Shown: one piece after another, positions 12,200-33,564 of the stretch
Layout: each line of letters starts with the position of its first letter
How positions within the stretch are numbered: position 1 is the stretch's first letter
IMG/VR virus record: IMGVR_UViG_3300033145_003233
Coordinates: 1-64,000 of that record
DNA length: 64,000 bases
Strand: one strand, 5' to 3'
Program-made: the position numbers and the translations under genes
The notes under the pieces: generated by a model
Databases searched by the model: none
The model's input: the letters and a program-made list of their open reading frames with translations, nothing else
Told to the model about the DNA's origin: nothing

Positions 12200-15100
12200 T
12201 TACTTTCCGTAAGTTTTTCTCAATTGAGTTAAGGTATTATCATCAGCTTCCTGATTCTGTTTCCCTAAGGTGAACATAGATGACAACTTACTACTTAACT
12301 CATCCTGATTATTTCTTACGCTACTTGCCTCATTTATTTGAACGGATTGAGACAATTTTCCGTCTGAAACAGTGTTGAGTCCTTTTTCGCCTGCAAAAAT
12401 GGCTTTCTCAAAATCTTTAATTTGTTCAGCCTTATAGGATTTTAATTCATCTATTTTCATTTGTAATTCTGAAGCTTCAATTCTTTTAGTTTGAAGCATT
12501 CTTCCTGCTACCCTATAAGCCTCGGACTCCGAATCGCTTTTAGCGATTACCGTACCTTTATCTTTTGTAGTTTTTTCACTATCTAACTCTTCCTTACCCT
12601 GTTGGGCATTACCCGTAAACACTTCAGGGTGATCTTTAGGAGAGTCAGGTTTTGAACCTATTGTTTCACTTTCATGCCCCATCATTCCACTATCGCTTTT
12701 AATATCGGATTCATTAATTTCTTCTGCTTTAAATTTTTCTTCTTTTCCGATTGTGCTATCACCTGAAAACGGTTGGATATCTTTATCTTTAGCGACTGGT
12801 TCTTTTGGAGCTAATTTCTTTGCAATTCTTTCTGCCAAACTTGAAATTCCGTCTTTTGAGGAACCGAATCCTCTCATATGGTAAAGGTCTTTATCAACAG
12901 AAGCTAATTCTGTTTTGCCTTGACCTTGATCTCCACCAGTAAATCTTGAATCACCACCACTTAATCCTACTTCCTTCTCATGACCCATCGTACCATCGTC
13001 TGATGGGATAACTGGTAGAGGCTTATCCTGTGGATTTAAGTCAGAAGGCTCTTGACCCATTGTTGCATTATCTCTTGGTACGCTTGGTTTTCCTGCTGAA
13101 GGAATAGTCTCGCCCTCATGACCCATCTTGCCGCCTTCAGGTCCTTCTGTATATTGGCCTATATCTTTTGAGTCTTGGGCTGTTTCCTGAGAGATTTCTT
13201 TCTCTCCAGCTTGCTTATTTAAAACATTAATAACACTAGATAAATCCATCATAGGTTTACCCACTTTTCCAATTGAATTATTAGCAACTAAATCTTCTTT
13301 AGGATCTTTTTCTGCCCCTGCCGTAACAGGTCTTCCATCAACTTTAATCTCTACATTCGATGTTTGTTGTGGAATTCCTTTATTATTTTGCATATCATTT
13401 TGCATATCATTTTCAAATGGGGCTACTCCTGGAGTTGCGGGTTTCATATTTCCGCCGCCCATTGGTTGATCTTGAAGATTCATTGAACCAGGATCGACTG
13501 CTTTCATTTCTCCTCCACCCATAGGATCAGCAGGTTTCATTTCTCCCCCGCCCATTCCAGGCATAGATGGCTTAGTCTCATCTAATTCTCCTGGAGCTAT
13601 TGACTCATCAATACCTTCTGCCATTGGATCTCCCATTGGATCTCCCATTGGATCTCCTTCGATACCTTCTGCCATTGGATCTCCCTCAATACCCTCTTCT
13701 CCTATACCTCCACCTTCAGCTACTTCTATAGCCTGTCCAAGTTGTTCTACTATTTCTGATGGAAGTTCCAGAGTCACTGTCCCTCCTATATCTCCACCAC
13801 CTTCTTCTGCAAACGGATCAATTTCGTCGCCCATTCCTTCTTCTTCTACAGGAGCATCACTAACAATATCTTCTCCTGCCATCTCATCTGCTAAGAAATC
13901 TTCTCCATCAGCAACAGCTATTTTCAAAGAAGCACAAATTTCTGCTGACTGTCTTAACCCATGACCTGAACGAACCTGATGAGTGATACAATCTTCATCC
14001 CCATCAGTATCAGACCAACTATCTGCTAACTTTACAGATATATTAGATGTATAAATATCTGCCTTCTTTAATCTATTACATACAGACTCAGCAAGTGGCT
14101 TGCCTTCATCTGGACCACTTAAACAAAGGGCATTCTGACCAAATCTTCGTGAAAGTTTTTCTATACAAGATTCTATTGGGAAGCTATCTCCATAACCACC
14201 ATATGCTAATTTATAATCATCAATAACAGAACCTTCTTTACTTGCAGTCTTAATTGATTTTAATTTTCCTGCCTGTTTTAATTTAAGAATAGTATCTACT
14301 TGATCTTTAAGCTCTAACTTATCAAAATCACCTATCTTCATATCCATACTTGAAAGAGCCTTAACAAATCTTTGCTTTGCCCTATTACATGATGGGCAAA
14401 TGGCATTAGCTACCTTTGGTTCCCATTCCCACTGCCCATACACTTGCTTACCATCTTTTGAAACCATATAAGATACTTTATATTTCGTTCCTGTATCTAA
14501 ACAGATATAAGAACCTTCCCCCACCTTAACTGTATTAGGTTTTCCTGTTGCGGGGCTAATCGAACCTATTTTTATATCATTAGAAGAGGCTTTCTTTACC
14601 ACTTCTGGAGTTAATTTCATAACTGTAGCGAATTTAGGAATTCTCCAATTATTTACAGAAGCGGCTGATGGAATTTCTCCCATTTCGGCCTCTTGTCCCA
14701 TTCCCATTTCAGGTTCTGTTGGCATCTCAAAACCTTCTCCTTCAAAACCTTCCTCTGCTGCTCCTAATTCTTCTTCTTCGCTTGGGGTTGTCCCCTGCCA
14801 TTTTGTGACATTGACTTCTACTTTATATGTCATTTCCGAAGAACAATTATTACATTTTCCTTTTCCACCTATAATATCAACATCATCACTTCCACAAGCA
14901 GGGCAAATAGACCCAGGAGGAAGTGGCTCAAGAGTATCTTCTAATCCGCCTTCTTCTCCGAATCCACCTTCTTCGCTAAGATTTTCCATTGGAGGTGTTT
15001 CCATAGCCGGTGCTTGTGGCATACTAGCTCCAGCTCCTGGGCCTTGACCCATTCCACCTTGACCACCCATTTCTCCGCCCATCATTTGAGCTTTCTTTTG

Positions 15101-17806
15101 GATTTCTGTTTTAGCAGCAGATACTTTAATATCTTTTTCACTAGACTGACAAGCTTCCATTCCTCCGCCGCCTGCTGGTGCTCCGCCGCCATATCCCATA
15201 TCCTTAGTTTCCTCTTCTCCGTTTAAGTCGGCATCAATATCTTCTACAGGGCCTTCGATAACATCTCCAATATCATCCGGGCATATCTCTTCCTCTGCCC
15301 CAGCACCATCTTGAATATCAATAATAAGACCACCATCTCCAGAAACTTCCACCTTAATAACAGCGGCTGCTACCGATTCATCGTCAATCATTTCTTGTGC
15401 AAACTTTTTAACTCCAGCAACAAAAGCTTCCTTGTCAGTAATAGGAACTCCTATATCTTCCATGGTAGCTTTAATTTGGTATCTTCCATCTTCAGGCTTA
15501 TCAAGAGCTTTAATAGCAGAATTAAGAGCATCTGCTTTAGTAATAAAATCTCCCTGTACCAAACTATTTAACTTACTTTTTGCTAAAGCATCAACTTTAT
15601 CCATAGTAGTTATATCATTAACTATATGGTTAATAGTATCAAAGAGATCTTCTGCCTTCATACCTGTTTGAGCATTATCTGCCGTTGAAAGAACCAAAGC
15701 ATCTACAGTAGATACACTATTTTGAGAAGCAGTTTTATTAAAATAAGCTGCATTAGCAGCTATCATATTTCTATTCTCTTTCTTTTGAGGTAGAGAATTA
15801 ATAATAGAAAGAAAAGCAACCTTCGTTTTCATGCTGGCATTATCACTAATAAGAGAAGAAATCTTCTTAACTTCTTCTGGAGACTTGCGATATTTAGCAA
15901 TAACATCGGCCACTATGTTTGTAGCAGTCTTAACAAGAGACAAAGAGTAATCCTTATTTGCCCATCGTTTCAAGCCATCTGTCATAGAAATATTTCTTAG
16001 CTGATCTTCTGTAATGGTTTCTAAATTACCTATAAACTTATGCTTAGTAAGAAGTTCTCTAATTTGAGCTTGTGTAATATATTCGGTATAATCTTCTGCT
16101 AAATCTCCAGCTATATCTCTGCTAAAATCATCCCATTGTTTTTCAGTAATAACATCAGGATACTCATTAAAGTGAATAACAGCATCGCCTAATGCACTTT
16201 CGGTTTTCAACTGATCTTCTGTAATGGTTTCGTATGTACCTTTGCGAACCTGTGGGCTTTCGCTAGTCGTATCATTAGATCTTTCCGACCCACCAACCTG
16301 TTCTTTGCTTTCGGTAATACCTTCATACACTTCTCCCGTCCTAGGATGAAGCTGTTCTTCTTCTTTCATAAGTTGTTTCTCTGTTATTACTTCCAGATTA
16401 TCAGCACCGGCTGCTGTTTTTATATTCTTATCATTAGTAGCCATTTTTGCTCCTATATCTAATTGATTATTAATATTTTTATTTAACCTATTATTTAAAT
16501 CACACATACTCTGAACTAGAGAATTGATCTTATTACTTAACTTTTCATTTATTTCGGAAAAATCCTCTTTATTTTTTGAAGATTTTTTAGGCATAGTCAG
16601 ACTTCCAAGCCCTCCCAGGTCAGAAGTTTGAGCACCAGGAGCTTCTCCTCCTCCACCTTGTGGTGGCATTTGTTGTGGCATTACTGGGTCAGGGAATTGT
16701 TCTGTAGGAATAGGAGATTCACTATCGGCTGTTATTTCGGGAGAAGGTAATGCCCCATAACCCATTTCAACTAGTTCATCAAAGATACCTTGGACATCAG
16801 CCATAGCTTTTACTAAATCGCTAACATATTCCATAGAAACATTTTCTTTTTGCTGTAGCATACTTTTTACAACATTTTCCATTTCATTCATGCTACTTTT
16901 AAGGGAATCTAACTCTTTTACTCCTCCCAACTTAGCAAGAATTTTACTATCATCAGTATCAAGATATGACTCTTTAAGAAGCCTATTAACATTTTTTGAA
17001 AGCGATGCTACTTTCTTCTCAAGATTTGGAACATTAAGAACACACCTAACCCCACAAATATCACAAGCAGGATTAACTACAAAACTATTTTCTATAAATT
17101 TTAAACCATAATTGTGCTCAAAAATCGCTTGTTCTGCATGTTTAAGCATTTCAGGATTATCTGAGGAGCTTCCGCACAAGGGGCATTTTTCTTCTTTATC
17201 TGTAGGGCTATTATGATAAGCGCATCTTATATCTCCACTATACTTTCTATTTTTCCTATTAGAGACATGAGAGCAATAGTCCTCTGCTGTATTAGCTTTA
17301 TTATGACAAACAGAACAAAGACTTGATTCTACTGAGCATCCCATTGATGTCCCTGTAATATATCCTTCTTCAAGACCTCTTGCCAAACGTGGATAGGCAA
17401 CTTTATCTACCCTACCAATAATATAAATTCCACCTTCTTTTTTATCGTACCACGAATGAACACATTCTCCCCTTGCTTTTTCTACATCATCATTTTGATG
17501 ATTAGTAAACAAGGGAACTCCCACAAATGACTCTGTAGCAGTTTTAAGTTCTTTCTCGCTAAAAGAATCTCCATTATCATTTGGTTCATCTTTTTTAATA
17601 GCAAAGATTTTTATATATAAATGATCTGGATGTTCTTTAGTAGCTTCTTTAAGATCAAATCCACCCAAATCTTCACCCTCTATATCAACAGAAGCTGTTT
17701 TTATTTGATTGGGCAAATTATAAATATCCCATCCTTCTCCTTCTGGCCTGTTTAATGCCTTAATAGGACATTTATAAGAAAAAGTTGCTCTTTTATACAT
17801 TGCCAT
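12200..17806 (-). CDS. Prohead maturation protease fused to a very large scaffold/core region (1868 aa)
   Basis: N-terminal PNDNGDSF, LFTNHQ and GTSMG (His/Ser pair of HK97/assemblin-type proteases); several CxxC ribbons; acidic Gly/Met-rich linkers; ITExQ repeats. Confidence 0.8.
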   Translation of the reverse strand: MAMYKRATFSYKCPIKALNRPEGEGWDIYNLPNQIKTASVDIEGEDLGGFDLKEATKEHPDHLYIKIFAIKKDEPNDNGDSFSEKELKTATESFVGVPLFTNHQNDDVEKARGECVHSWYDKKEGGIYIIGRVDKVAYPRLARGLEEGYITGTSMGCSVESSLCSVCHNKANTAEDYCSHVSNRKNRKYSGDIRCAYHNSPTDKEEKCPLCGSSSDNPEMLKHAEQAIFEHNYGLKFIENSFVVNPACDICGVRCVLNVPNLEKKVASLSKNVNRLLKESYLDTDDSKILAKLGGVKELDSLKSSMNEMENVVKSMLQQKENVSMEYVSDLVKAMADVQGIFDELVEMGYGALPSPEITADSESPIPTEQFPDPVMPQQMPPQGGGGEAPGAQTSDLGGLGSLTMPKKSSKNKEDFSEINEKLSNKINSLVQSMCDLNNRLNKNINNQLDIGAKMATNDKNIKTAAGADNLEVITEKQLMKEEEQLHPRTGEVYEGITESKEQVGGSERSNDTTSESPQVRKGTYETITEDQLKTESALGDAVIHFNEYPDVITEKQWDDFSRDIAGDLAEDYTEYITQAQIRELLTKHKFIGNLETITEDQLRNISMTDGLKRWANKDYSLSLVKTATNIVADVIAKYRKSPEEVKKISSLISDNASMKTKVAFLSIINSLPQKKENRNMIAANAAYFNKTASQNSVSTVDALVLSTADNAQTGMKAEDLFDTINHIVNDITTMDKVDALAKSKLNSLVQGDFITKADALNSAIKALDKPEDGRYQIKATMEDIGVPITDKEAFVAGVKKFAQEMIDDESVAAAVIKVEVSGDGGLIIDIQDGAGAEEEICPDDIGDVIEGPVEDIDADLNGEEETKDMGYGGGAPAGGGGMEACQSSEKDIKVSAAKTEIQKKAQMMGGEMGGQGGMGQGPGAGASMPQAPAMETPPMENLSEEGGFGEEGGLEDTLEPLPPGSICPACGSDDVDIIGGKGKCNNCSSEMTYKVEVNVTKWQGTTPSEEEELGAAEEGFEGEGFEMPTEPEMGMGQEAEMGEIPSAASVNNWRIPKFATVMKLTPEVVKKASSNDIKIGSISPATGKPNTVKVGEGSYICLDTGTKYKVSYMVSKDGKQVYGQWEWEPKVANAICPSCNRAKQRFVKALSSMDMKIGDFDKLELKDQVDTILKLKQAGKLKSIKTASKEGSVIDDYKLAYGGYGDSFPIESCIEKLSRRFGQNALCLSGPDEGKPLAESVCNRLKKADIYTSNISVKLADSWSDTDGDEDCITHQVRSGHGLRQSAEICASLKIAVADGEDFLADEMAGEDIVSDAPVEEEGMGDEIDPFAEEGGGDIGGTVTLELPSEIVEQLGQAIEVAEGGGIGEEGIEGDPMAEGIEGDPMGDPMGDPMAEGIDESIAPGELDETKPSMPGMGGGEMKPADPMGGGEMKAVDPGSMNLQDQPMGGGNMKPATPGVAPFENDMQNDMQNNKGIPQQTSNVEIKVDGRPVTAGAEKDPKEDLVANNSIGKVGKPMMDLSSVINVLNKQAGEKEISQETAQDSKDIGQYTEGPEGGKMGHEGETIPSAGKPSVPRDNATMGQEPSDLNPQDKPLPVIPSDDGTMGHEKEVGLSGGDSRFTGGDQGQGKTELASVDKDLYHMRGFGSSKDGISSLAERIAKKLAPKEPVAKDKDIQPFSGDSTIGKEEKFKAEEINESDIKSDSGMMGHESETIGSKPDSPKDHPEVFTGNAQQGKEELDSEKTTKDKGTVIAKSDSESEAYRVAGRMLQTKRIEASELQMKIDELKSYKAEQIKDFEKAIFAGEKGLNTVSDGKLSQSVQINEASSVRNNQDELSSKLSSMFTLGKQNQEADDNTLTQLRKTYGK

Positions 17807-17819
17807 AATTATTATTCCC

Positions 17820-18107
17820 TTATATAACTCTGTTAGTATGCAAACTAGGCATAGTTTTTAATTGTCTATCTTGTTCTCCAGAAGAGATGCCTCTACTTTC
17901 TAATTCTTTTCTATAAACTGATGCTTGATCAAAGTATTTACCTTCATTAACACTTATTCGAGATGCTTCAATAGCATCTTTTAAAGCTCCTAATAAAGAT
18001 CCTGTATCCATTTGTTTTGCCTTCTCTTCTTCTCGTTGAAAATCTACCTTAAATGGATCGTACCCTTCAAAAGTATTTGCATATTTTTTAGTAATAATTC
18101 TTTTCAT
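17820..18107 (-). CDS. Hypothetical head-region protein
   Basis: MKRIITKKYA N-terminus carries the K-x-A motif. Confidence 0.7.
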   Translation of the reverse strand: MKRIITKKYANTFEGYDPFKVDFQREEEKAKQMDTGSLLGALKDAIEASRISVNEGKYFDQASVYRKELESRGISSGEQDRQLKTMPSLHTNRVI

Positions 18108-18328: not shown

Positions 18329-18544
18329 TTATATATAGATACGCTGAGCAGCAAATCGTCCTAACCCTATTTTTGACCCCTTAACAAAGATAGATATTGG
18401 GCCATTAAGAAATCCCTTAGAAATGATTTGAATTTTAGAACCTGGAATAATCCCCATTGAGATTAAACAATAAGAAAGACTGCCGTTCCCACCTATTCTG
18501 GAAACAACTCCTTTCTGGCCCTCCTCCATTTCAGCTAAACTCAA
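18329..18544 (-). CDS. feoA: FeoA-domain protein
   Basis: LAEMEEGQKGVVSRI...LISMGIIPGSKIQII...GPISIFVKGSKIGLG...AQRIYI is a full FeoA pattern. Confidence 0.85.
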   Translation of the reverse strand: MSLAEMEEGQKGVVSRIGGNGSLSYCLISMGIIPGSKIQIISKGFLNGPISIFVKGSKIGLGRFAAQRIYI

Positions 18545-18548: not shown

Positions 18549-18965
18549 TTATCCCTTAACGTGTCTTGGTATTTCTATGGCTGCTAACTGATCAACTGAA
18601 TATTTAGGGGCACCTTTCGGAAATGGTATCCCCCATTTTTCAGAAGTATGACTTAAAGCTGCTACAGATGTAGTAAAATATTCTCCGCTAGGAGCATAAA
18701 CTTTTTTTGTTGGATCATCAGGTAATTTTTTTATTCCAGCAAAAAACATTTTCTTTCCTTCTTTGGTTAACGAAGGTCCCATAATTACAAAATAATCTGA
18801 ATCAGTTGTATAATCATGTCCTTCCCATCTTATATATGACAAAGGCCCTATGTCTTTATCAAATCTCTCTTTTAGCCTTTTAGACCTCTCATGATAAGCT
18901 GGTTCCCATTTAATTCCTCTATCTTTGATTCTTTTTCTACCAGCATATTTTAATATATTAGTCAT
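18549..18965 (-). CDS. Hypothetical protein downstream of portal
   Basis: Overlaps portal stop; MTNILKYAG. Confidence 0.75.
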   Translation of the reverse strand: MTNILKYAGRKRIKDRGIKWEPAYHERSKRLKERFDKDIGPLSYIRWEGHDYTTDSDYFVIMGPSLTKEGKKMFFAGIKKLPDDPTKKVYAPSGEYFTTSVAALSHTSEKWGIPFPKGAPKYSVDQLAAIEIPRHVKG

Positions 18966-21243
18966 TAGCTACATTCCCTATACATAAAATCTGACCATGT
19001 GGAATAGATGTTCTATTACATCCTATCTTGCCCTTCGAAAGACAAGCCTCGTATTGAGGATTATTCCCATTTATAGAAGCATACTTGATAAATTCTTTAT
19101 CTTCACTCGCTGCCTTATGGTTTCTTGCTGCTTCAGATATATGTTTAAAAACAGTATCAGATACAGTATCCATATTTTCATTAATAGCTTCTTCATTAAA
19201 TCTCAAAATTCTCCATCCAACATTCGCCAACTTCTGATCTCTATTTAAATCTCTTTGTTGAAAATCCTCTCTTTCATGCCAAATAGCTCCATCAATCTCT
19301 ACCCCAACTCCTATCCTAGGATAGGCGAAATCAATAGAATAAGGCCTCCCTTCCCCTGGAACCTTGATTTGATACTGAGCATATAATTCATAAGGTTGTT
19401 TCAAAGAAGTTAAAACCTTAAACATCTTTTGCTCTAACTTTGTTAATTTTATCATTTTAGGAGGTGGACCTTGTTCTTCTTCTTGTTGTTGCTGACTTTG
19501 TGATCCTCTTTTTCCTATCTTAGGCAAAGGAGTTTCAGCAGAAGCGGCCATACCCATACCGCCACCCATACCACCGCCCATACCTCCACCCATGCCGCCT
19601 CCCATGCCGCCTCCCATGCCGCCGCCCATATCTCCTCCTGCTCCAGGCATGCCTCCCATGCCTTCTCCTCCCATATCCGCTGGCATACCGCCCATACCTG
19701 CGCCCATGCCCATCGTCCCTAAATTACCAGCCTGATCTCCACCAGCAACCATACCGCTAGCAGATGCCATTATCTGCTCCTGTCTTATTTTCTCTACCTC
19801 AGAATCATAATCTAAATCTAATTCATCTAAAATTGTCTCAGCAGAAACCAGACCTTTATCATAACATTGTAACAATGTCTGTATTCTGTTGGTTTTATCT
19901 CTAAGTTGTAAATCATTCCATATTAATTCAGGATAAAGATAAACAACCTTTCCCATTTCTTTTGATTCTTTTTCATCTATAAATCCCTGCATCATAGCAA
20001 GAGGTAAAAAGACATTTTTCTCTACCCATAATTTTAATTTATTTCTCCAGTTGTCTAATCTTCTGATAAGAACCTCTACACCAACCTGAGCACTTGTATA
20101 ACCAGCCATTTCTCCATTTAGAATTGCCTGATTCAACATTAAACCATCTAAAATTTCTTTCCCGACTTGCTCTAACTCTTGTGTTATATTATGAATCTTA
20201 CCTGTAGCTCCATACCACTCATAATCAAAAGCATGATGAGTAACAATTGTAAGATTAGGATCATTAGCAACAGCAGACAATTGATTCTGAACATCTTGCA
20301 AATCATTATCTGTAGCAGGACGATCTTTATCACCTATTTTAACAACTCTAACCGGAAGAATCAATCTCTCAGCAACAATCCAGTTGGCAGTCATAATTTT
20401 AGTTTTATATGCTAAAACAGTAAATAATCTCTGAAGCATAGAAGTGCCATAAGTTCCATAATCGCTTGCATTATGCTTTAAATGACTGATACACCTATCT
20501 GATAATGGAACAGGCTGACCAGTAGCAACTAGGTCGACTAGAGATTGTGGCAAACTATCATAAATACTTCTGGGTTCTTTTCTCTGTACAATCAATTTTA
20601 ATTCTTCATCAGGCATTAAATAATATTCAGGATTATTAGCAATAGGATTATCTCTTACTTCTATATAATCAGGATTCATTAATTTTATGGTTTTAAATTT
20701 ACCATCCGGATGATTGCATTTCTCTCCCTTTTCATCCCTACCTCTACCCCCGCAATGAGGACAATCAATTTCTGTAAATGGGAAAACATCTCCCAATAAA
20801 AAATATTCATGACTAACGCTATTTAATTTATCTGTAAGATCTAAAGTCTTTACCATATCTTCGAAAAATTTTAGTATCTTTCTAGACTTACATTCTAATT
20901 TAAAACCATTCATACTAAAATTAGCATAAAAATCTACTCCTGCTGCCACCTTAGGTTCATTCATATAGTAGAACCTAGCCCATTGCATAATCTCTCTTCT
21001 TCTACTAGCAATCTGCCAGTTTTGAGGAGTATGTAAAGGACTAAAGAACATAGGTTGCGTCCATGCAACACTAGCTCCAGCTCCAGCGTATTGAGCATTT
21101 TTAGTAATAGGAAAATTAGCAGTTACGGATGACGCATATTTTTTATTAGCTCTTGGTCCACTTGATGAATTATAAGCTCCAGAAGCCGCCACCATTCTTT
21201 GTTTGTTTTTAGGTGAATTATCTGATACAATGAATTTAGCCAT
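18958..21243 (-). CDS. Portal protein with Gly-Met linker and C-terminal DUF559 (Vsr-like) nuclease domain
   Basis: Portal-like core (NPDYI; HLKHNA...YGTSML; LILPVRVVKIG) in head-module position; IDFAYP..GVEIDGAIWH...RDQKLANVGWRILRF is a DUF559 signature. Confidence 0.78.
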   Translation of the reverse strand: MAKFIVSDNSPKNKQRMVAASGAYNSSSGPRANKKYASSVTANFPITKNAQYAGAGASVAWTQPMFFSPLHTPQNWQIASRRREIMQWARFYYMNEPKVAAGVDFYANFSMNGFKLECKSRKILKFFEDMVKTLDLTDKLNSVSHEYFLLGDVFPFTEIDCPHCGGRGRDEKGEKCNHPDGKFKTIKLMNPDYIEVRDNPIANNPEYYLMPDEELKLIVQRKEPRSIYDSLPQSLVDLVATGQPVPLSDRCISHLKHNASDYGTYGTSMLQRLFTVLAYKTKIMTANWIVAERLILPVRVVKIGDKDRPATDNDLQDVQNQLSAVANDPNLTIVTHHAFDYEWYGATGKIHNITQELEQVGKEILDGLMLNQAILNGEMAGYTSAQVGVEVLIRRLDNWRNKLKLWVEKNVFLPLAMMQGFIDEKESKEMGKVVYLYPELIWNDLQLRDKTNRIQTLLQCYDKGLVSAETILDELDLDYDSEVEKIRQEQIMASASGMVAGGDQAGNLGTMGMGAGMGGMPADMGGEGMGGMPGAGGDMGGGMGGGMGGGMGGGMGGGMGGGMGMAASAETPLPKIGKRGSQSQQQQEEEQGPPPKMIKLTKLEQKMFKVLTSLKQPYELYAQYQIKVPGEGRPYSIDFAYPRIGVGVEIDGAIWHEREDFQQRDLNRDQKLANVGWRILRFNEEAINENMDTVSDTVFKHISEAARNHKAASEDKEFIKYASINGNNPQYEACLSKGKIGCNRTSIPHGQILCIGNVAND

Positions 21244-24762: not shown

Positions 24763-25557
24763 TTATTTGTCAGAAACAAGAGCGTTTACGTAATCATCAC
24801 CAAAAAGTTGTCTCCAATAAGTTGTTAAGAAAGACTTATTCTTTGAGTCAAGATTAGCGAATCTTACGAATTGTGTCTTTTTAGAAGCTTCTTTATCATC
24901 TTCACCATCACTGCAATCTTTTGTGTCATCTTTTTTGCCGTCTTTTTTGCCTTTAATTTTATCTTGCACAGCTTGTGGAAGATCCTCTAAAGCAGCTTCC
25001 TTAATCTCTTCATCATCATCATCCTTGTCCTTCTTAGCTTCCTTAGTCTCTTCTTCATCATCATCCTTCTTAGCTTCTTTGGTCTCTTCTTCGTCATCAT
25101 CTTTCTTAGCTTCCTTCTTCTCTTCTTCTTCATCGTCATCTTTACACTTTTCACAACCCGCTACCTTAACATCTCCCTTGGTTGATCCACCTTTTTCTTC
25201 CTTAGAAGGAGTCTTTGGATCATTAGTAAACTTTTCCGAACCCTCTGCCTTTGGTTGACCTGAATCTTGAGCCTCATCCGGCTCATCGGTCTTAGCTTTA
25301 GCAGATTTGCCTTCATCTTTACCTTCTTTTTTAGCACTTGGACCTGCTTTAGGCATAGTCGTTGACTCTCCTGTTTGATGTAAAGGTTCGACATCGAGCT
25401 GACCACTAGAATCGGCCTCTTCTTGCTCTGCCGCAACTTTTACGTTCTTTTCTTCTACAGCAGCAGTTTTAATTTGATGTTCTTCTCTATACTGCTTTAC
25501 AAAATCCTCAAAACGTGGAGCTTTGCCTGTCTTGATTTTATTAGTGATAAACTGCAT
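24763..25557 (-). CDS. Highly charged scaffold/core-like protein with (KKDDDEEETKEA)n repeats
   Basis: 36-nt tandem units at about 25010-25140; multiple K-T/V/E-A motifs; AGGAG SD. Confidence 0.75.
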   Translation of the reverse strand: MQFITNKIKTGKAPRFEDFVKQYREEHQIKTAAVEEKNVKVAAEQEEADSSGQLDVEPLHQTGESTTMPKAGPSAKKEGKDEGKSAKAKTDEPDEAQDSGQPKAEGSEKFTNDPKTPSKEEKGGSTKGDVKVAGCEKCKDDDEEEEKKEAKKDDDEEETKEAKKDDDEEETKEAKKDKDDDDEEIKEAALEDLPQAVQDKIKGKKDGKKDDTKDCSDGEDDKEASKKTQFVRFANLDSKNKSFLTTYWRQLFGDDYVNALVSDK

Positions 25558-25642: not shown

Positions 25643-27538
25643 TTATTTATATTTAGATATACCAGCTCCCTGACCCCTACCTCTAATAGTATTAACTAGA
25701 GTGCTAAGATATTTATACATCTCTGGATCTGCCACTAATAATTCCAAATCTGCTGTCTTATCCCCTGTTAATTTATATTTAGCAATAGATTCTTCTGGAG
25801 TTGATTGTAAACTTTGAGCACTATCTTGACCGAACTCTCCCGCTTCCGCTGGAGCAGATACTTGGCCTTCTCCCCCCATATCAACAGATGGTCTATCTGA
25901 GTCAGGAATATTATAAACTGAATTCATAGCCATATTAACACCATTAAGAACTTTTACCGCATTATCATAAATACCCTGATAAGTAATCCCTCCTTGTCCC
26001 CAAGCCGCATTGCTTTGATTCACTACTTCCTGTAAATTACTAATAGCCGGTTGAAGAATTTGTTGAGTTCTTGGATTTTCTTGAGAAATAAGACCCCCCA
26101 TCCAAGTAAGCATCTCCCCTGCTTCACTAACAATATCCTGATATTCTGTGTAAACGTTTCTTTGTAAATCGTTTGTAACTTGTGCAGTTTGAACTTGTCT
26201 GGTAGATCTAACATTTTTTTGAATCAAATTAACTAATCTATTAGCCCTATTAGCTAAATTCTGCAACTTCTTAATCAAAGTTCCTTTTCTAGCAACTAAA
26301 TTACCTACCCAGTTAGATATACCCTTTCCGACATCCTTCACTGTGTCCCATAACCCAGCTTCTTTTAATAAACCTATAGAAATATCTGCTAGCTTATCTC
26401 CAAGTTCTGTATATCCATTTTCTTTTAGAGATTCTGCTAAATTTGTTAAATTAGCCGAACTTTCTACAATTAAATCTGTATGTTTTTTTGATTCTTCTTC
26501 TATAGTAGCATAAATAGCTTGTGGAGTTGTAAGCCCTTCTTTCACTCTTCCTTCTATTTTCGTAATAAAGAGTTTATTCCACCCTTTTTCTTCTTTTTCG
26601 CTTAATTTAATTTTTTTCTTTTCTTTTGTGGCATATTTTTCCCATCCACTCTTGTCGTTATTAATGGAATTTTTATATTCTTCCCAGCATTCCATCCATA
26701 CTTCTTGTGCAGGAGTTTCTGGCTTAGTGGTTCTTTTGCTTCTATAACAATTATCCCAGCATCTCCTGTTTCTTAGCCAATATCCTTGGACTCCGACATA
26801 TTGTGCTATTTTTAAATTAGCCAATGCTCTATGAGCATCTTTAACTACCTCTGCTGATTTTTTCATCCCGTTCTTTTGTAATTTATCTATTGCAAAATCT
26901 AATTCTTTATTTATTATCATGGCTTTTATCCCTTTTCCGGATTGTGGCATAACTCTCATTCTTTCTCTAAATTCTTTCCCTGGAAATATATAATTAACAA
27001 TATTAGGAACTATAAAAGCCCTAATATGTCTCACAGATCTATCAAAAGTAACTAGGATTAAATTGCCATTCTTGGCAGGATACATATAATGGGGTTCAAT
27101 TATCCTTGTTATTGATGCCCCAGTTCCTAATCCTATTTCTCTTTTTAGCTTTCTGCCTCCTCGACTTTTTGTTCTTCCCTGAGTTATATAATTAATTCTT
27201 ACTACTTTATTATTATCAATAGCCCACTTCATTGCTTCTTCTGTACTTCCAAACTCAGGAAGTCTTTCATCTGTAATCTCTGGTTCTTCATATGGTTCCT
27301 CAACAACAGGAGCTTCTTCAAAATTATCGGCTAAATATTCACCTACATTTTCATCACCTATTTCTACAACAGGGACTTCTCCCCTTTCTAATGCATCATA
27401 ATCAATAGCATCTACATCCTTGGACATATAGTTTTTATAATCGCTAATGGTGTCATCGCCAAAAAAATCATACAACTCATCAAAGTTGGTTCCTTCCACA
27501 AAACTAGCGATACTCAATGCTGTATTAATAATTCTCAT
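25643..27538 (-). CDS. Multidomain protein with WYL-like domain and Cys/Trp-rich central motif
   Basis: AIDNNKVVRINY...RIIEPHY...LVTFDRSVRHIRAFIVPNI resembles WYL; GYWLRNRRCWDNCYR...WMECW. Confidence 0.65.
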   Translation of the reverse strand: MRIINTALSIASFVEGTNFDELYDFFGDDTISDYKNYMSKDVDAIDYDALERGEVPVVEIGDENVGEYLADNFEEAPVVEEPYEEPEITDERLPEFGSTEEAMKWAIDNNKVVRINYITQGRTKSRGGRKLKREIGLGTGASITRIIEPHYMYPAKNGNLILVTFDRSVRHIRAFIVPNIVNYIFPGKEFRERMRVMPQSGKGIKAMIINKELDFAIDKLQKNGMKKSAEVVKDAHRALANLKIAQYVGVQGYWLRNRRCWDNCYRSKRTTKPETPAQEVWMECWEEYKNSINNDKSGWEKYATKEKKKIKLSEKEEKGWNKLFITKIEGRVKEGLTTPQAIYATIEEESKKHTDLIVESSANLTNLAESLKENGYTELGDKLADISIGLLKEAGLWDTVKDVGKGISNWVGNLVARKGTLIKKLQNLANRANRLVNLIQKNVRSTRQVQTAQVTNDLQRNVYTEYQDIVSEAGEMLTWMGGLISQENPRTQQILQPAISNLQEVVNQSNAAWGQGGITYQGIYDNAVKVLNGVNMAMNSVYNIPDSDRPSVDMGGEGQVSAPAEAGEFGQDSAQSLQSTPEESIAKYKLTGDKTADLELLVADPEMYKYLSTLVNTIRGRGQGAGISKYK

Positions 27539-27944: not shown

Positions 27945-27961
27945 ATTTAACTCCTTATTTC

Positions 27962-28330: not shown

Positions 28331-28331
28331 A

Positions 28332-28622: not shown

Positions 28623-28663
28623 ACCTTGTTCTATATATTTCTTGCTTATTATCTTTTTTATTT

Positions 28664-29098: not shown

Positions 29099-29108
29099 AT
29101 TATTTCTC

Positions 29109-29525: not shown

Positions 29526-29536
29526 TATAATTTTCC

Positions 29537-29818
29537 TTATGCTGTAGTTTCTATGAAATCAAATTCTTTAATCGCCCCCTTAAGAGTAGGCTTACATTGA
29601 TACGCTCTATGAGTATTACAAACATACCAAGTTTTACCATTTACTACTGCCTTCCATACGGCAGGAGTGGATTCTCCATTGGGACCATGATGCCAAACCG
29701 CACCAGCTTCCATAACTTTTTTTCTTTCTTCATCTGTTAATGTTCTTCTATTCTTCTTTAAGGTCTTCATTTCAGGGCCTTTACTTCTAGCATATTTTGT
29801 TGTTTCAATCGTTTTCAT
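29537..29818 (-). CDS. Hypothetical protein
   Basis: MKTIETTKYA start. Confidence 0.7.
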   Translation of the reverse strand: MKTIETTKYARSKGPEMKTLKKNRRTLTDEERKKVMEAGAVWHHGPNGESTPAVWKAVVNGKTWYVCNTHRAYQCKPTLKGAIKEFDFIETTA

Positions 29819-30071: not shown

Positions 30072-30072
30072 T

Positions 30073-31091: not shown

Positions 31092-31111
31092 TTTTGAAAC
31101 ACACCTCTACT

Positions 31112-32002: not shown

Positions 32003-32093
32003 CAGTTTCTCCTTTAAAATCAATATCTATATCTATTTATTCTATAATAGTTTATCGGAAAAAAATGCCTCAAAGATTAAAGAAATGAGGTTC

Positions 32094-32522: not shown

Positions 32523-32525
32523 TAT

Positions 32526-32750
32526 TTAGATAACCCGTTGGTAAGGAGCTACATTCTGTGAATTTATCCTTATGCCATGAACATCTACACTAGATGCCGC
32601 TTGCGTAAGTAACTCTTGAGCAACCATTTTTTCTTGCTCTTTGTCCTCTTGTTCTTCAATAAATATATCTCCTTCTATAGAAAAAGAGTATCTTGAAGAT
32701 TGACGTTGCTTATTAAACCAATTTTGAGCCTTTTTAAACCAATTAGCCAC
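32526..32750 (-). CDS. Hypothetical protein with tandem NWFK leader (GTG start, MANWFKKAQNWFNKQ)
   Basis: Start reassigned to GTG overlapping the upstream stop. Confidence 0.65.
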   Translation of the reverse strand: MANWFKKAQNWFNKQRQSSRYSFSIEGDIFIEEQEDKEQEKMVAQELLTQAASSVDVHGIRINSQNVAPYQRVI

Positions 32751-33564
32751 CCATATCTCCTTCAGGATAATTAGCTTTTGCTTCTTCACAGCTTTTGAAA
32801 TTATCAATAGGAGTCCCATCATGCTCACAAACCTGTATTAATCCATCTGGCCCTTTCTTAAAAACCGGGTCTGGACTTGAAGAAACAGGATGTTCTAAAG
32901 ATCTTCTTATTGGAGGAACCATATTTTGAGATAATAATCTTAACTTTCCTGCCGTGATATCTATTACCTGTTGTTTTTCATCGTCATTAAGATCTCTATT
33001 AGTCTTAGCTGCTATAGCATAAATATGAAATAACATAGCATCTGCATCTTTAAGAGATGCCATTACCATTTTATCTATACTCTTCCCTTTAAAACGATCA
33101 GGATGATTTTGCAATTGGCTTGAAGATGATGGAATATTATTTTTTACTTTTGTCTTCTTGCCCTCCATTTGCACCCCAACATATTTATCCCAAAATACTG
33201 TATCTCTTTTAGAATTATCTTCTGCCTTCTTATAGTCTTTTAGCTTTTCTTGATTTAGTTCTTCTGACTTCGCATTAATAGGAGTAACACCTTCAGTCTT
33301 CTCTCCGAAAGCCACAGTCTTATCATCCATATCTGCCTCCGTAATAGCTACAACCGCTTCATTTTTCCTGGCAGCATTAAGTTGCTGATTAAATGGGACA
33401 GTATTGTCCTTATCTTTTGTCGGCAAACTTAAATTAATATTTTTTTCAACTACTCCCTGAGACTCATTAGACAAACCCATGCTTTTTCTATTATCTTCTA
33501 GCATTTTGTCATTTATGGCATAATCAGACGAACTAGCCTTTTTGCTTAAATTAAATTTTTCCAT
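32743..33564 (-). CDS. Hypothetical head-associated protein
   Basis: MEKFNLSKKASS start; preceded by AAGGTTTT promoter motif at 33613-33621. Confidence 0.75.
   Translation of the reverse strand: MEKFNLSKKASSSDYAINDKMLEDNRKSMGLSNESQGVVEKNINLSLPTKDKDNTVPFNQQLNAARKNEAVVAITEADMDDKTVAFGEKTEGVTPINAKSEELNQEKLKDYKKAEDNSKRDTVFWDKYVGVQMEGKKTKVKNNIPSSSSQLQNHPDRFKGKSIDKMVMASLKDADAMLFHIYAIAAKTNRDLNDDEKQQVIDITAGKLRLLSQNMVPPIRRSLEHPVSSSPDPVFKKGPDGLIQVCEHDGTPIDNFKSCEEAKANYPEGDMGG

What the first reader, a model, noticed from the sequence alone, without database searches (positions are those of the whole stretch)
12200..33564. Pervasive K-x-A motif marks probable maturation cleavage sites across the head module
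Seen: IKTAS (x2), NKTAS, IKTAA, KKAQ and KKAS in the protease; KKYAS, KNAQ and IKYAS in portal; FNLKKAQ, FNLKKTAQ and FNWKEAQ in the 454-aa protein; KTAA, KVAA and KEA (x5) in the 264-aa protein; LKIAQ and LKEAG in the WYL protein; FNLSKKAS, TKKYA, TKYA and LKYA near small-protein N-termini. Known: assemblin-fold proteases cut after Ala (V/L-x-A|S in herpesviruses); T4 gp21 and phiKZ gp175 process many head proteins at short consensus sites. Inference: specificity K-x-A|(S/Q/A/G), also releasing MNWY cargo. A second leader type, FN(L/W)xKKAQ, recurs.
Basis: partly seen in the sequence, partly recalled or inferred. Interest (0 to 1): 0.7.

Follow-up and report, generated by a model that had tools for sequence, protein, structure and literature searches.

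The report
Conserved K-x-A head-protein processing motif
A giant phage related to Bacillus phage G carries a short Lys-x-Ala motif, conserved and enriched only in its head-assembly proteins and on the N-terminal leaders of likely injected enzymes; it is most likely the still-unmeasured cutting site of the phage's capsid-maturation protease.

Summary
The window is the start of a 548-kb megaphage whose capsid protein is 55% identical to that of Bacillus phage G. K-x-A-[SQAG] occurs 32 times in ORFs of 12200-33564 against 11 expected by shuffling (z 6.5). The rest of the window and of the genome is flat, and control patterns are flat.

In 20-32 relatives the K and A of about 17-20 sites are nearly invariant, while the middle residue and the flanks vary.

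The enrichment replicates in several independent sets:
- phage G (25 observed, 6.1 expected);
- two 55-59% GC jumbo phages, where K.A is the top-ranked residue pair;
- 105 metagenomic giant protease fusion proteins (3,122 observed, 1,502 expected).

The 1868-aa protein starts with a protease domain whose model best matches herpesvirus assemblin and T4 gp21. It has invariant His103 and Ser154, and conserved K-x-A sites bracket the domain.

MNWYKKAQ leaders and the internal FNLKKTAQ-type motifs are one two-part signal: an aromatic-Asn-hydrophobic element followed by K-x-A. It heads unrelated enzymes, including an ADP-ribosyltransferase, a HicA-like protein, a kinase and an Acb1-like protein.

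Best reading: protease cleavage at [K/R]-x-[A/S] followed by [S/Q/A/G], plus a T4-CTS-like capsid-targeting leader. No cleavage has been measured. Several listed sites are not conserved.

The parts
12200..17806 (-). 1868-aa giant head protein: N-terminal leader, protease domain, then about 1600 aa of linker, Zn-ribbon and coiled-coil regions. It holds 28 K.A (11.8 expected) and 10 K.A[SQAG].
   Evidence: 105 metagenomic homologues of at least 1000 aa all have a K.A excess.
17015..17692 (-). Protease domain (aa 39-264). Invariant His103 (17498-17500) and Ser154 in GTSMG (17345-17347).
   Evidence: PHROG head maturation protease, E 2.4e-10. AF2 model pLDDT 65.7. Best structural matches are herpesvirus proteases (Z 7.3, 7.1) and T4 gp21 (Z 6.3). 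Invariant columns.
17783..17794 (-). Site K5-R-A7-T at the extreme N-terminus of the giant protein (MAMYKRAT).
   Evidence: K5 is invariant in 21 sequences including phage G gp19 (VKIAG). 106 of 146 family representatives have K.[AGS] within the first 12 aa.
17690..17701 (-). Site IKTA|S (aa 36-39), just upstream of the protease fold in a predicted disordered leader.
   Evidence: K 0.95, A 1.00, P1' Ser in 18 of 20 relatives. Phage G gp19 has VKTAA here. pLDDT below 50 for aa 1-43.
17003..17014 (-). Site KKVA|S (aa 265-268) at the C-terminal edge of the protease domain; candidate release site.
   Evidence: K 0.80, A 0.85. Phage G gp19 has EKVAS and LKIAS at the same edge.
16409..16420 (-). Site IKTA|A (aa 463-466) in the giant protein.
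   Evidence: K 0.95, A 1.00, flank identity 0.37.
15725..15736 (-). Site FNKTA|S (aa 691-694) in the giant protein.
   Evidence: K 0.75, A 0.90, flank identity 0.35.
15086..15097 (-). Site QKKA|Q (aa 904-907) in the giant protein.
   Evidence: A 0.95, P1' Gln in 18 of 20.
14240..14251 (-). Site IKTA|S (aa 1186-1189) in the giant protein.
   Evidence: K 0.90, A 0.90.
13205..13216 (-). Site NKQA|G (aa 1531-1534), the last conserved site. It leaves a 335-aa C-terminal piece that ends in a coiled-coil-like segment next to the decoration and capsid genes.
   Evidence: K 0.75, A 0.90.
18958..21243 (-). Portal protein, 761 aa, with a C-terminal DUF559/Vsr-like endonuclease domain.
   Evidence: PHROG portal E 1.8e-43; Pfam DUF559.
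21091..21102 (-). Portal N-terminal site ITKNA|Q (aa 48-51). A variable leader of about 45 aa lies upstream and conserved sequence downstream.
   Evidence: P(I/L)T(K/R)x(A/S)Q..G in nearly all relatives; phage G gp14 has QRKMAS at the aligned place.
21902..23266 (-). 454-aa portal-adjacent head protein with three FN(L/W)-K-x-A-Q motifs.
22934..22945 (-). Motif FNLKKA|Q (aa 105-111; the coordinates cover K-x-A-Q).
   Evidence: Conserved in 28 relatives among highly variable, indel-rich flanks. Lies within a region of pLDDT mostly below 50 (aa 62-139).
22484..22495 (-). Motif FNLKKTA|QHK (aa 254-263).
   Evidence: K, A and Q are 100% conserved in 28 relatives.
22058..22069 (-). Motif KPFNWKEA|Q (aa 395-403). 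In many relatives it is followed by only 5-10 residues before the stop.
24763..25557 (-). 264-aa acidic, Lys-rich internal-protein candidate. The conserved site is QIKTA|A at aa 30-33 (25459-25470); the KEA repeats lie downstream.
   Evidence: K 0.96, A 1.00 at site 30; the other sites are poorly conserved.
25643..27538 (-). 631-aa head-module protein with conserved LKIA|Q (aa 243; 26801-26812) and LKEA|G (aa 392; 26354-26365).
   Evidence: Site 243: K 0.85, A 0.89, Q 0.93. Site 392: K 0.85, A 0.74. No WYL hit.
18549..18965 (-). 138-aa protein with leader MTNILKYA|GRKR (site at 18939-18950).
   Evidence: In 29 relatives a leader of variable length, often containing FNL, always ends in K-x-(A/S) immediately before the conserved GRKRIKDRGI.
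17820..18107 (-). 95-aa protein with leader MKRIITKKYA|N (site at 18075-18086).
   Evidence: MKIIK(T/S)K(K/R)(Y/F)A(N/D)TF is conserved in 4 of the 5 listed relatives.
29537..29818 (-). 93-aa protein with leader MKTIETTKYA|R (site at 29786-29797).
   Evidence: No homologues among the fetched loci.
32743..33564 (-). 273-aa protein downstream of the large terminase, with leader MEKFNLSKKA|S (site at 33532-33543).
   Evidence: The one relative with an intact N-terminus starts MAKEKFNL.
10648..11520 (-). Major capsid protein (290 aa). It has no K.A[SQAG] site and is probably not a substrate.
   Evidence: PHROG major head protein E 1.2e-64. 55% identical to phage G gp27. 1 K.A vs 1.6 expected.
5356..5814 (-). 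Two MNWY-leader genes: a 78-aa HicA-toxin-like protein (5356-5592) and a 72-aa protein starting MNWYSRIIIKTA|D (5596-5814).
8026..9022 (-). Two MNWY-leader genes: a 208-aa HTH protein starting MNWYKKQLKIA|F (8026-8652) and a 127-aa protein starting MNWYNR (8639-9022).
58906..62508 (+). Four tandem genes with M(N/S)WY leaders: 124 aa; 713 aa (MSWYKKA|Q); 180-aa ART-PolyVal ADP-ribosyltransferase (MNWYKKA|N); 177-aa AAA_33 P-loop kinase.

Best explanation
K-x-A is most likely the recognition and cleavage motif of this megaphage's capsid-maturation (prohead) serine protease. That protease is the N-terminal domain (about aa 39-264) of the 1868-aa protein encoded between the portal and capsid genes.

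Inferred specificity, in protease subsite notation: P4 is hydrophobic or Thr, P3 is Lys (Arg tolerated), P2 is free (Thr, Val, Glu and Lys are common), P1 is Ala (Ser tolerated), and P1' is Gln, Ser, Ala or Gly. The cut is placed after Ala.

Inferred course of events. Inside the assembled prohead the enzyme frees itself at the sites that bracket its fold (aa 5-7, 36-38 and 265-267). It chops the rest of its own polyprotein into pieces of about 200-340 aa. It trims an N-terminal leader of about 50 aa from the portal. It cuts the portal-adjacent 454-aa protein and the 264-aa and 631-aa proteins, and it removes short N-terminal leaders from small head proteins.

A subset of sites carries an upstream aromatic-Asn-hydrophobic element (FNL, FNW, YNL, or MNWY at a protein's start). 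This two-part signal probably works like the T4 capsid-targeting sequence: the upstream part docks the protein into the prohead core and the K-x-A part lets the protease release it. Unrelated enzymes that bear the MNWY leader would then be packaged cargo delivered with the DNA. These include an ADP-ribosyltransferase, a HicA-like protein, a kinase and HTH proteins, and in relatives an Acb1-like phosphoesterase, a helicase, a nucleotidyltransferase and a transglycosylase.

Shown: the enrichment, conservation and placement of the motif, and the family-wide replication. The protease fold assignment is moderately supported. Inferred: cleavage itself, the scissile bond, targeting and packaging.
For: 1. 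Enrichment is specific to the head module: 32 vs 11.0 (z 6.5), with flat controls. K.A ranks second in an unbiased pair scan. Only the two head-module bins are enriched across 548 kb.

2. Purifying selection on K and A with a free middle residue and diverged flanks. The clearest cases are the 454-aa protein site 258 (K, A and Q all 100%) and giant-protein sites 36, 463 and 1186.

3. Replication:
- 38 related loci show a 2.5-4.4-fold excess in nearly all.
- Phage G gp2-gp21 has 25 vs 6.1 (z 7.9) although only the capsid, protease and portal proteins are BLAST-detectable homologues.
- In Tunturi_5 (59% GC) and LR745208 (55% GC), K.A is the top-ranked pair upstream of the capsid gene but ranks 63rd and 401st downstream.
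- 105 giant protease fusions from 50%-identity clusters have 3,122 vs 1,502; every protein has a ratio above 1, and controls are 0.98-1.06.
- In Rizal, K.A and R.A are both moderately enriched.

4. Enzyme. PHROG head maturation protease. The model's best matches are herpesvirus proteases and T4 gp21. His103 and Ser154 are invariant, and inteins are inserted right after GTSMG in eight relatives.

5. Site placement. Sites bracket the protease fold and are conserved in phage G gp19. N-terminal sites lie in predicted disorder. Variable leaders end in K-x-A/S immediately before conserved mature sequence in the 138-aa family and the portal. All three sites of the 454-aa protein lie outside its two confidently folded segments; those at aa 108 and 258 are in regions of mostly below-50 pLDDT.

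6. The alternating P3/P1 pattern with a hydrophobic P4 and a Ser-type P1' matches measured prohead proteases: SPN3US gp245 cuts after A-x-E with Val at P4 and Ser at P1' (PMC10052503).

7. Leaders. 9 of 16 MNW[YFH] leaders carry K.A within 17 aa, against 37 of 762 other ORFs (p 3e-8). The two-part pattern occurs 14 times vs 3.0 expected genome-wide. MNWYKKA genes occur in 26 IMG/VR stretches. At least five of those contigs are among the portal-relative contigs, and 4 of 5 further large contigs tested also encode this protease family. The leader is conserved as protein, not as DNA. The T4 CTS is likewise 10 aa, with targeting residues upstream and processing residues at positions 8 and 10 (PMC9026906).
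Against: - No experimental N-terminus, peptide or cleavage assay exists for this phage, and none could be found for phage G (the 2020 phage G structure paper is not held).
- The protease model has modest confidence (pLDDT 65.7) and structural Z scores are at most 7.3. No Pfam peptidase family matches.
- Sites are not preferentially in indel-rich alignment regions: gap fraction 0.311 around sites vs 0.313 at random positions.
- K.A at aa 88 and 135 is conserved inside the folded protease, so not every conserved K.A can be a cut site.
- 7 of 16 MNW[YFH] leaders have no K.A nearby.
- The C-terminal FNWKEA motif would release only a 5-10-aa tail, which fits a docking motif better than a processing site.
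- One 329-kb contig with an MNWYKKA gene shows no match to the protease.
- The capsid protein has too few expected K.A sites to test for avoidance.
Confidence: 0.68

Rival explanations
1. K-x-A, with or without the FNL/NWY element, is a docking or targeting peptide that binds the capsid interior, scaffold, portal or protease without being cut. This would be analogous to encapsulin cargo-loading peptides or the C-terminal capsid-binding tail of scaffolding proteins.
For: In many relatives the third motif of the 454-aa protein sits 5-10 residues from the C-terminus. The motif is a conserved linear peptide, in most modelled cases in a region of low model confidence. MNWY occurs without a nearby K.A in 7 of 16 leaders. 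All evidence of selection is equally compatible with binding.
Against: The sites bracket the protease fold and densely populate the protease's own polyprotein (28 in 1868 aa), which is typical of self-processing. The alternating conserved positions with a free middle residue and a small residue followed by Ser/Gln match measured protease logos. Variable leaders end exactly at the motif before conserved mature sequence.
Confidence: 0.15
2. The motif marks proteolysis, but with a different scissile bond or enzyme. Examples are a cut after the Lys (as HK97 gp4 cuts after Lys103; from my own knowledge of HK97), or cutting by a host or second phage protease rather than the giant protein's domain.
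For: Sequence alone cannot place the scissile bond. The Lys is as conserved as the Ala. The published phage G annotation lists several further proteases, including ClpP/ClpX homologues.
Against: All measured assemblin-type prohead proteases read P3 and P1 with a free P2 and cut after the second conserved residue (herpesvirus V/L-x-A|S from established knowledge). The dipeptide Ala-Ser is itself enriched 1.56-fold in the polyprotein family. The motif co-occurs with this protease family across genomes of 29-59% GC.
Confidence: 0.1
3. The excess is a by-product of composition or secondary structure (Lys/Ala-rich helices, coiled coils, low-complexity repeats) or of the reader's post hoc choice of pattern.
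For: Head proteins here are Lys-rich. Three KEA instances sit in a tandem acidic repeat. About a third of the instances are not conserved. The P1' set was chosen after seeing the data.
Against: Shuffles keep each protein's composition. Neighbouring patterns (KA, K..A, A.K, K.S, K.G, E.A) are flat or depleted. K.A emerges from unbiased scans in four independent lineages. Site-specific conservation is far above that of other Lys and Ala residues.
Confidence: 0.04
4. The MNWYKK gene starts reflect a DNA-level element (promoter, ribosome-loading sequence or recombination microhomology for cassette shuffling) rather than a protein signal.
For: The genes occur in tandem cassette-like arrays. The sequence TGGTATAAA within the leader codons resembles an extended -10 promoter element (reading of the sequence).
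Against: In 58 instances the upstream 30 bases are not conserved and synonymous positions vary freely: AAC 27 vs AAT 31, TAT 49 vs TAC 9, and all four Ala codons are used. The same peptide motif occurs internally in the 454-aa protein.
Confidence: 0.03

Closest known systems
Herpesvirus assemblin (MEROPS S21): protease fused to scaffold, self-cleaving at release and maturation sites (V/L/I)-x-A|S
   Same: Best structural matches of the protease model (Z 7.3 and 7.1). Protease at the N-terminus of a long assembly polyprotein. Inferred P1 Ala and P1' Ser. Conserved P3 with a free P2. A candidate release site directly after the protease fold (aa 265-268).
   Different: P3 is Lys/Arg instead of Val/Leu/Ile, and Gln is as common as Ser at P1'. 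The polyprotein is about three times longer, with 8-10 conserved sites. There is no detectable sequence similarity (no Pfam S21 hit). No conserved site lies near the C-terminus that would act as a maturation site. The herpesvirus site rule is from established knowledge and was not tested here.
T4 gp21, phiKZ gp175 and SPN3US gp245 prohead proteases, which process many head and ejection proteins at (L/I or A/S/G)-x-E
   Same: The same kind of system: one head protease and a three-residue P3-x-P1 motif, repeated within propeptides of many head proteins, the portal and the enzyme itself. Hydrophobic P4 and Ser at P1' (PMC10052503). T4 gp21 is a structural match (Z 6.3).
   Different: P1 is a small neutral residue (Ala) rather than Glu, and P3 is basic. 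The major capsid protein seems not to be a substrate. The protease is fused to a giant polyprotein in this clade (it stands alone in phage G).
T4 capsid targeting sequence (CTS) of internal proteins IPI-III and Alt
   Same: A leader of 7-17 residues shared by otherwise unrelated proteins. An upstream part and a downstream protease motif at the P3 and P1 positions; in T4 the targeting residues are 4 and 7 and the processing residues 8 and 10 (PMC9026906). The cargo includes an ADP-ribosyltransferase, as Alt is in T4.
   Different: The sequence is different (MNWYKKA-type). Packaging and injection are untested. The same element also occurs internally and near a C-terminus in a structural protein. 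Some leaders lack the K-x-A part.
Polyvalent proteins of phages and conjugative elements (Iyer et al. 2017, PMC5512222)
   Same: Shared domain vocabulary (ART-PolyVal) and the shared prediction that such effectors travel in the capsid and enter the host with the DNA.
   Different: Here the effector-type domains are mostly separate small genes, each with its own leader, not fused into one multidomain protein. No MuF or metallopeptidase domain was detected.
Bacillus phage G head module (gp14 portal, gp19 protease, gp27 capsid protein)
   Same: Capsid protein 55% identical, portal 32% and protease 36%. The same K-x-A excess, and the same sites around the protease fold and at the portal N-terminus.
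   Different: The phage G protease is a separate 300-aa protein. No MNWYK gene starts were found in phage G; its leaders are of the MKRLISKTA type.

Membership tests
Assemblin-fold capsid maturation serine proteases (herpesvirus S21, T4 gp21 S77, HK97 gp4 S78) | Characteristic fold shared with solved members | tested here: met
   AF2 model mb4b7b32ec4d1 (pLDDT 65.7). The top 38 Foldseek hits are all herpesvirus proteases, at probabilities of 0.87-1.00. The second look gives VZV protease Z 7.3, PRV protease Z 7.1 and T4 gp21 Z 6.3, and the top 25 rows are all from this family. The Z values are middling, so this is moderate rather than strong support.
Assemblin-fold capsid maturation serine proteases (herpesvirus S21, T4 gp21 S77, HK97 gp4 S78) | Conserved catalytic His and Ser | tested here: inconclusive
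   His103 is invariant and Ser154 (GTSMG) nearly invariant in 21 sequences including phage G gp19. Inteins are inserted right after GTSMG in eight relatives, as is typical of active sites. Superposition of these residues onto the catalytic residues of a solved structure was not done.
Assemblin-fold capsid maturation serine proteases (herpesvirus S21, T4 gp21 S77, HK97 gp4 S78) | Match to a curated sequence family of these peptidases | tested here: not met
   No Pfam peptidase family matches, even at E up to 10. The profile search of solved structures gave only spurious hits. Only PHROG phrog_18299 'head maturation protease' (E 2.4e-10) and phrog_2774 (E 3.7e-26) match.
Assemblin-fold capsid maturation serine proteases (herpesvirus S21, T4 gp21 S77, HK97 gp4 S78) | Gene lies in the head module between the portal and major capsid genes | tested here: met
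   The order on the - strand is portal, small ORFs, giant protease protein, 187-aa protein, capsid protein. The same order holds in phage G, Rizal and Tunturi_5.
Assemblin-fold capsid maturation serine proteases (herpesvirus S21, T4 gp21 S77, HK97 gp4 S78) | Proteolytic activity on head proteins | not testable with these tools
   Needs a biochemical assay or virion proteomics.
Prohead-protease cleavage motifs of the P3-x-P1 type | Two conserved positions separated by one free position | tested here: met
   Conservation of K and A against the variable middle residue. Logo from 320 site instances.
Prohead-protease cleavage motifs of the P3-x-P1 type | Sites confined to head or internal proteins and repeated within them | tested here: met
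Prohead-protease cleavage motifs of the P3-x-P1 type | Sites flank the protease itself (self-processing) | tested here: met
   K5-x-A7, K36-x-A38 and K265-x-A267 are conserved in relatives and in phage G gp19. This shows placement only, not cleavage.
Prohead-protease cleavage motifs of the P3-x-P1 type | Mature termini mapped at the motif | not testable with these tools
   No peptide-level data are held.
T4-type capsid targeting sequences | Short N-terminal leader shared by unrelated proteins | tested here: met
   15 leaders matching M[NS]W[YF], plus one MNWH, in the genome; 58 distinct gene starts across the genome and the fetched loci. They sit on HicA, ART-PolyVal, AAA_33, HTH, SLT, UvrD, PolyA_pol and Acb1-like domains.
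T4-type capsid targeting sequences | Leader ends in the head protease's motif | tested here: inconclusive
   9 of 16 leaders have K.A within 17 aa, against 4.9% of other ORFs; 7 do not.
T4-type capsid targeting sequences | Leader is sufficient for packaging into the head and is removed there | not testable with these tools
   Needs reporter fusions and virion analysis.
Polyvalent proteins (Iyer et al. 2017) | Several effector-type domains fused in one polypeptide | tested here: not met
   MNWY-leader proteins are mostly single-domain. The giant protein has no recognised effector domain.

The most novel reading that the evidence does not exclude
The two-part peptide (aromatic-Asn-hydrophobic, then K-x-A) is a portable 'pack into the capsid, then release' tag used across a large, almost wholly uncultured family of megaphages. 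On this reading the injected protein arsenal of these phages (ADP-ribosyltransferases, HicA-like RNases, Acb1-like anti-CBASS enzymes, kinases, helicases, transglycosylases) can be read directly from genome sequence. The protease would have an Ala|Ser-type specificity closer to herpesvirus assemblin than to any characterised phage enzyme.
Probability: 0.4. Interest if true: 0.8.

Novelty: new variant of a known kind. Interest (0 to 1): 0.66.

Why it matters
Proteolytic head maturation and capsid-targeting leaders are well studied in T4 and the phiKZ-like phages. Nothing comparable is described for phage G and the metagenomic megaphages.

The protease family is large: 3,416 cluster representatives at 50% identity, mostly giant fusion proteins. 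A sequence rule for its cut sites would have several uses:
- It would define the mature virion proteins of these phages.
- It would explain why the protease sits at the head of a 1,800-2,700-aa polyprotein.
- It would give a sequence-only way to list the proteins these phages probably inject with their DNA, including anti-defence candidates.

The prediction can be tested at once, because phage G is in culture and phage G virion mass-spectrometry datasets have been published.

An inferred Ala|Ser preference with a basic P3 would also be a new specificity among phage prohead proteases. It resembles the herpesvirus enzyme, which bears on the shared ancestry of the two groups.

Tried and rejected
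- Complex prediction of the protease domain (aa 39-264) with the 27-residue peptide around FNLKKTAQ of the 454-aa protein returned 'no answer' (score 0.13, mark 0.32). It is evidence neither for nor against.
- A profile search of solved structures with the protease alignment gave only spurious hits. Pfam found no peptidase family.
It was repeated with the window and fetched loci only.
- The fold search of the 454-aa protein model found nothing (best E 1.0), so a MuF/SPP1 gp7-like identity is unconfirmed.
- Natural gene fission at K-x-A sites among close relatives: all intact homologues are fused, so there is no test. Only phage G has a separate protease, and its boundaries agree.
- Are sites preferentially in indel-rich alignment regions? 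No difference (0.311 vs 0.313, p 0.51).
- Motif avoidance in the capsid protein: too few expected sites to test.
- Literature searches found no published cleavage motif for phage G or its relatives and no mention of an MNWY leader. The 2020 phage G capsid paper is not held, and the 2025 phage G multi-omics paper has no held supplements.
- A DNA-level origin of the motif was rejected, as was a compositional artefact.
- Bxz1-like mycobacteriophage Rizal gave only a moderate K.A and R.A excess (ranks 16 and 12 of 1,372). Extension of the rule to that group is left open.

Full report
**What the window is.** The window is the first 64 kb of a 547,943-bp IMG/VR virus record. Genes from 36 to about 45.5 kb lie on the - strand. 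PHROG profiles identify four head genes:
- a major capsid protein (10648-11520, E 1.2e-64);
- a portal (18958-21243, E 1.8e-43), which also carries a C-terminal DUF559 endonuclease domain;
- a large terminase (33639-35537);
- a head-maturation-protease match (E 2.4e-10), with a stronger match to an unannotated family (phrog_2774, E 3.7e-26), in aa 57-200 of an 1868-aa protein (12200-17806).

The capsid protein is 55% identical to gp27 of Bacillus phage G. This is therefore a phage-G-like megaphage.

**Check of the observation.** All listed motif instances are present. Shuffling residues within each protein gives 11.0 expected K.A[SQAG] in ORFs of 12200-33564, against 32 observed (z 6.5). Outside that range the count is 10 against 9.8. 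K.A alone is 79 against 43.9. Six related control patterns are flat.

A scan of all 400 residue pairs at gaps 0-3 ranks K.A second in the head ORFs, behind a Met-Gly low-complexity signal. Along the whole genome only the 12-24 kb and 24-36 kb bins stand out (z 4.6 and 4.5); the rest totals 139 against about 131. Codon choice at the sites follows general usage.

**Conservation.** A portal-based scan fetched 38 related loci with 58-80% portal identity. Nearly all show a 2.5-4.4-fold excess.

In alignments of 20-32 homologues, K and A are nearly invariant while the middle residue varies and flank identity is only 16-50%. The conserved sites are:
- giant protein: 5, 36, 265, 463, 691, 904, 1186, 1531;
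- 454-aa protein: 108, 258, 400;
- 264-aa protein: 30;
- 631-aa protein: 243, 392;
- 138-aa protein: 6;
- portal: 48, 98, 720.

At K.A[SQAG] sites, 64% of the lysines are conserved in at least 70% of homologues, against 16% of other lysines. For alanine the figures are 54% against 21% (p about 1e-6 to 1e-7). About a third of the instances are not conserved, which matches the chance expectation.

The logo from 320 instances is: P4 Ile/Thr/Val/Leu, P3 Lys, P2 Thr/Glu/Val/Lys, P1 Ala, P1' Gln 35%, Ser 30%, Ala 10%, Gly 8%. A better local alignment of the portal N-terminus shows P(I/L)T(K/R)x(A/S)Q..G in almost every relative, after a variable leader of about 45 residues; phage G has QRKMAS at the aligned position. 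Arg at P3 and Ser at P1 are therefore tolerated.

**Independent replication.**
- Phage G shares only the capsid, protease and portal proteins with the window at BLAST level. Its gp2-gp21 nevertheless hold 25 K.A[SQAG] against 6.1 expected (z 7.9), while the next 30 kb hold 11 against 7.5.
- Two far more distant jumbo phages of 55-59% GC are Tunturiibacter phage Tunturi_5 and the uncultured LR745208. In both, K.A is the top-ranked pair in ORFs upstream of the capsid gene (58 vs 35.4 and 74 vs 41.4) and ranks 63rd and 401st downstream. Ser, Ala and Gly are favoured after the Ala.
- A profile search of 1.84 billion cluster representatives found 3,416 relatives of the protease domain, most of the best ones 1,500-2,700 aa long. 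In the 105 that are at least 1,000 aa, K.A is 3,122 against 1,502 expected. Every protein has a ratio above 1. Only the Cys-x-x-Cys pattern of zinc ribbons scores higher. Controls are KA 1.06, K..A 0.98 and A.K 1.04. R.A is at 1.51 and the dipeptide Ala-Ser at 1.56.
- Mycobacteriophage Rizal (Bxz1 type) has the same gene order, with a 1,370-aa protease fusion, but only moderate K.A and R.A excess.

**The enzyme and where the sites sit.** The alignment of the first 290 residues with 19 relatives and phage G gp19 shows invariant His103 and nearly invariant Ser154 in a GTSMG motif.

The AlphaFold model (pLDDT 65.7; residues 1-43 disordered) matches herpesvirus proteases best, and T4 gp21 next (Foldseek probabilities 0.87-1.00 for the top 38 hits; second-look Z 7.3, 7.1 and 6.3). 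The top 25 second-look rows are all from this family. No Pfam peptidase family matches. Membership therefore rests on fold, PHROG profile, conserved residues and gene position, at moderate confidence.

Conserved K-x-A sites bracket the fold: K5-x-A7 and K36-x-A38 upstream, K265-x-A267 downstream. Phage G gp19 has VKIAG, VKTAA, EKVAS and LKIAS at the corresponding places. Of 146 family representatives that start with Met, 106 have K.[AGS] within the first 12 residues.

The conserved sites would divide the giant protein into a leader, a protease of about 229 aa, and six pieces of roughly 200-345 aa.

In the 138-aa family the leader varies in length and sequence, often contains FNL, and always ends in K-x-A/S directly before the conserved GRKRIKDRGI. 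In the 454-aa protein the three motifs lie outside the two confidently folded segments. Those at aa 108 and 258 fall in regions of mostly below-50 pLDDT; the third, at aa 400, sits in a stretch of middling confidence.

**The leaders.** The genome has 15 ORFs starting M(N/S)W(Y/F), plus one MNWH. Nine of these 16 have K.A within 17 residues, against 37 of 762 other ORFs (odds ratio 25, p 3e-8).

FNLKKTAQ in the 454-aa protein aligns position for position with MNWYKKAQ. FNLKKAQ and FNWKEAQ are one residue shorter. YNLPNQIKTAS in the giant protein and FNLSKKAS in the 273-aa protein fit the same two-part pattern. Genome-wide that pattern occurs 14 times against 3.0 expected.

MNWYKKA gene starts occur in 26 stretches of IMG/VR, mostly on contigs of 45-500 kb, often in tandem arrays. 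At least five of those contigs are among the portal-relative contigs. Of five further large contigs tested, four encode the protease family.

Upstream DNA is not conserved and synonymous sites vary, so the constraint is on the peptide.

The proteins behind the leaders are unrelated to one another:
- in the window: HicA-toxin-like, ART-PolyVal ADP-ribosyltransferase, AAA_33 kinase and HTH proteins;
- in this genome or in relatives: an SLT transglycosylase, a UvrD-type helicase, a nucleotidyltransferase, a 2H/Acb1-like phosphoesterase and DUF5661.

Such domains are typical of proteins predicted to be packaged and injected (PMC5512222).

The closest worked-out precedent is the 10-residue T4 capsid targeting sequence. 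Its upstream residues target the protein and its residues 8 and 10 direct processing by gp21 (PMC9026906).

**Mechanism proposed.** The head protease recognises [K/R]-x-[A/S] and cuts before [S/Q/A/G]. It processes itself, its polyprotein, the portal leader and several internal proteins inside the prohead. The aromatic-Asn-hydrophobic element upstream acts as a docking or targeting part.

The alternating conserved P3 and P1, the hydrophobic P4 and the Ser-type P1' parallel the measured SPN3US gp245 logo, A-x-E with Val at P4 and Ser at P1' (PMC10052503). They also parallel the herpesvirus V/L-x-A|S rule (established knowledge).

What is shown is the motif's selection, distribution and placement; the protease fold assignment is moderately supported. 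Cleavage, the scissile bond, targeting and packaging are inferences.

**Weak points.**
- No proteomic termini are available.
- The protease model is of modest quality.
- A protease-peptide complex prediction gave no answer.
- Sites are not enriched in indel-rich alignment regions.
- K.A at aa 88 and 135 is conserved inside the fold.
- Seven of the 16 MNWY-type leaders lack K.A.
- The C-terminal FNWKEA motif of the 454-aa family would release only a tiny tail. This keeps a pure docking role alive as the main rival.

This is a new variant of a known kind of system: a prohead-protease motif plus a capsid-targeting-type leader, with a new specificity. It lies in a group for which no cleavage motif could be found in the papers held.

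Noticed in passing
L013:13163-15262 (also L016, L034, L009, L021, L020, L017, L040): Eight relatives carry an intein inserted directly after the protease's GTSMG motif, at the putative catalytic Ser. In L013 it matches Pfam Hint, Intein_splicing and LAGLIDADG_3. The window's copy is intein-free.
   Followed up: partly
window 9782-10549 (-): A free-standing LAGLIDADG homing endonuclease gene lies immediately downstream of the major capsid gene (Pfam LAGLIDADG_2, E 2.8e-12).
   Followed up: no
window 18958-19500 (-), portal aa about 585-726: The portal protein carries a C-terminal DUF559/Vsr-like endonuclease domain, followed by two K-x-A sites (aa 710, 720). Portal matches span about 1.2 to 2.6 kb of DNA among relatives, so insertions may come and go there.
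   Followed up: no
window 18329-18544 (-): A 71-aa FeoA-domain ORF (Pfam E 2.1e-17) sits between the portal and protease genes, an odd passenger in a head module. Only one related locus has it.
   Followed up: no
window 5356-5592 (-): A HicA-toxin-like mRNA interferase domain carries an MNWYKK leader, in the late-gene block downstream of the capsid gene. No HicB-like partner was looked for.
   Followed up: no
L064:33-554 and L066:40-561: In two relatives (their capsid-module contigs are L008 and L039) an MNWYKKAK leader heads a 2H-phosphoesterase/Acb1-like (anti-CBASS) protein. This suggests that anti-defence enzymes may be pre-packaged.
   Followed up: partly
window 13300-13900 (-), giant protein aa about 1300-1500: Met/Gly/Pro-rich low-complexity repeats (GDPM and PMGGGEMK units) make Met-Gly the most enriched dipeptide in the head ORFs. 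Met-Gly is also enriched across the 105 giant homologues (ratio 2.14).
   Followed up: no
window 1473-5039 (-): A 1188-aa protein with collagen triple-helix repeats (Pfam Collagen, E 7.9e-14), probably a fibre.
   Followed up: no
window 5948-7568 (-): A VWA-domain protein (5948-6586) and a sulfotransferase-like protein (6813-7568) lie among the MNWY-leader genes downstream of the capsid gene.
   Followed up: no
G000:C1:508523-508624 (outside the window): A second short match to the N-terminus of the capsid protein (59% identity over 34 residues, in a 75-aa open frame) lies about 500 kb from the real gene.
   Followed up: no
window about 44000-48000: GC skew flips sign and gene orientation switches from - to + at about 45.5 kb, marking a divergent transcription boundary.
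   Followed up: no
It is probably a protease-scaffold polyprotein.
   Followed up: partly
window 23969-24727 (-): The 252-aa head-module protein family has a conserved N-terminus, M.IVPSGK.R.MVAQ. It ends in Val-Ala-Gln without a Lys at P3, and may be a variant site or an unrelated motif.
   Followed up: no
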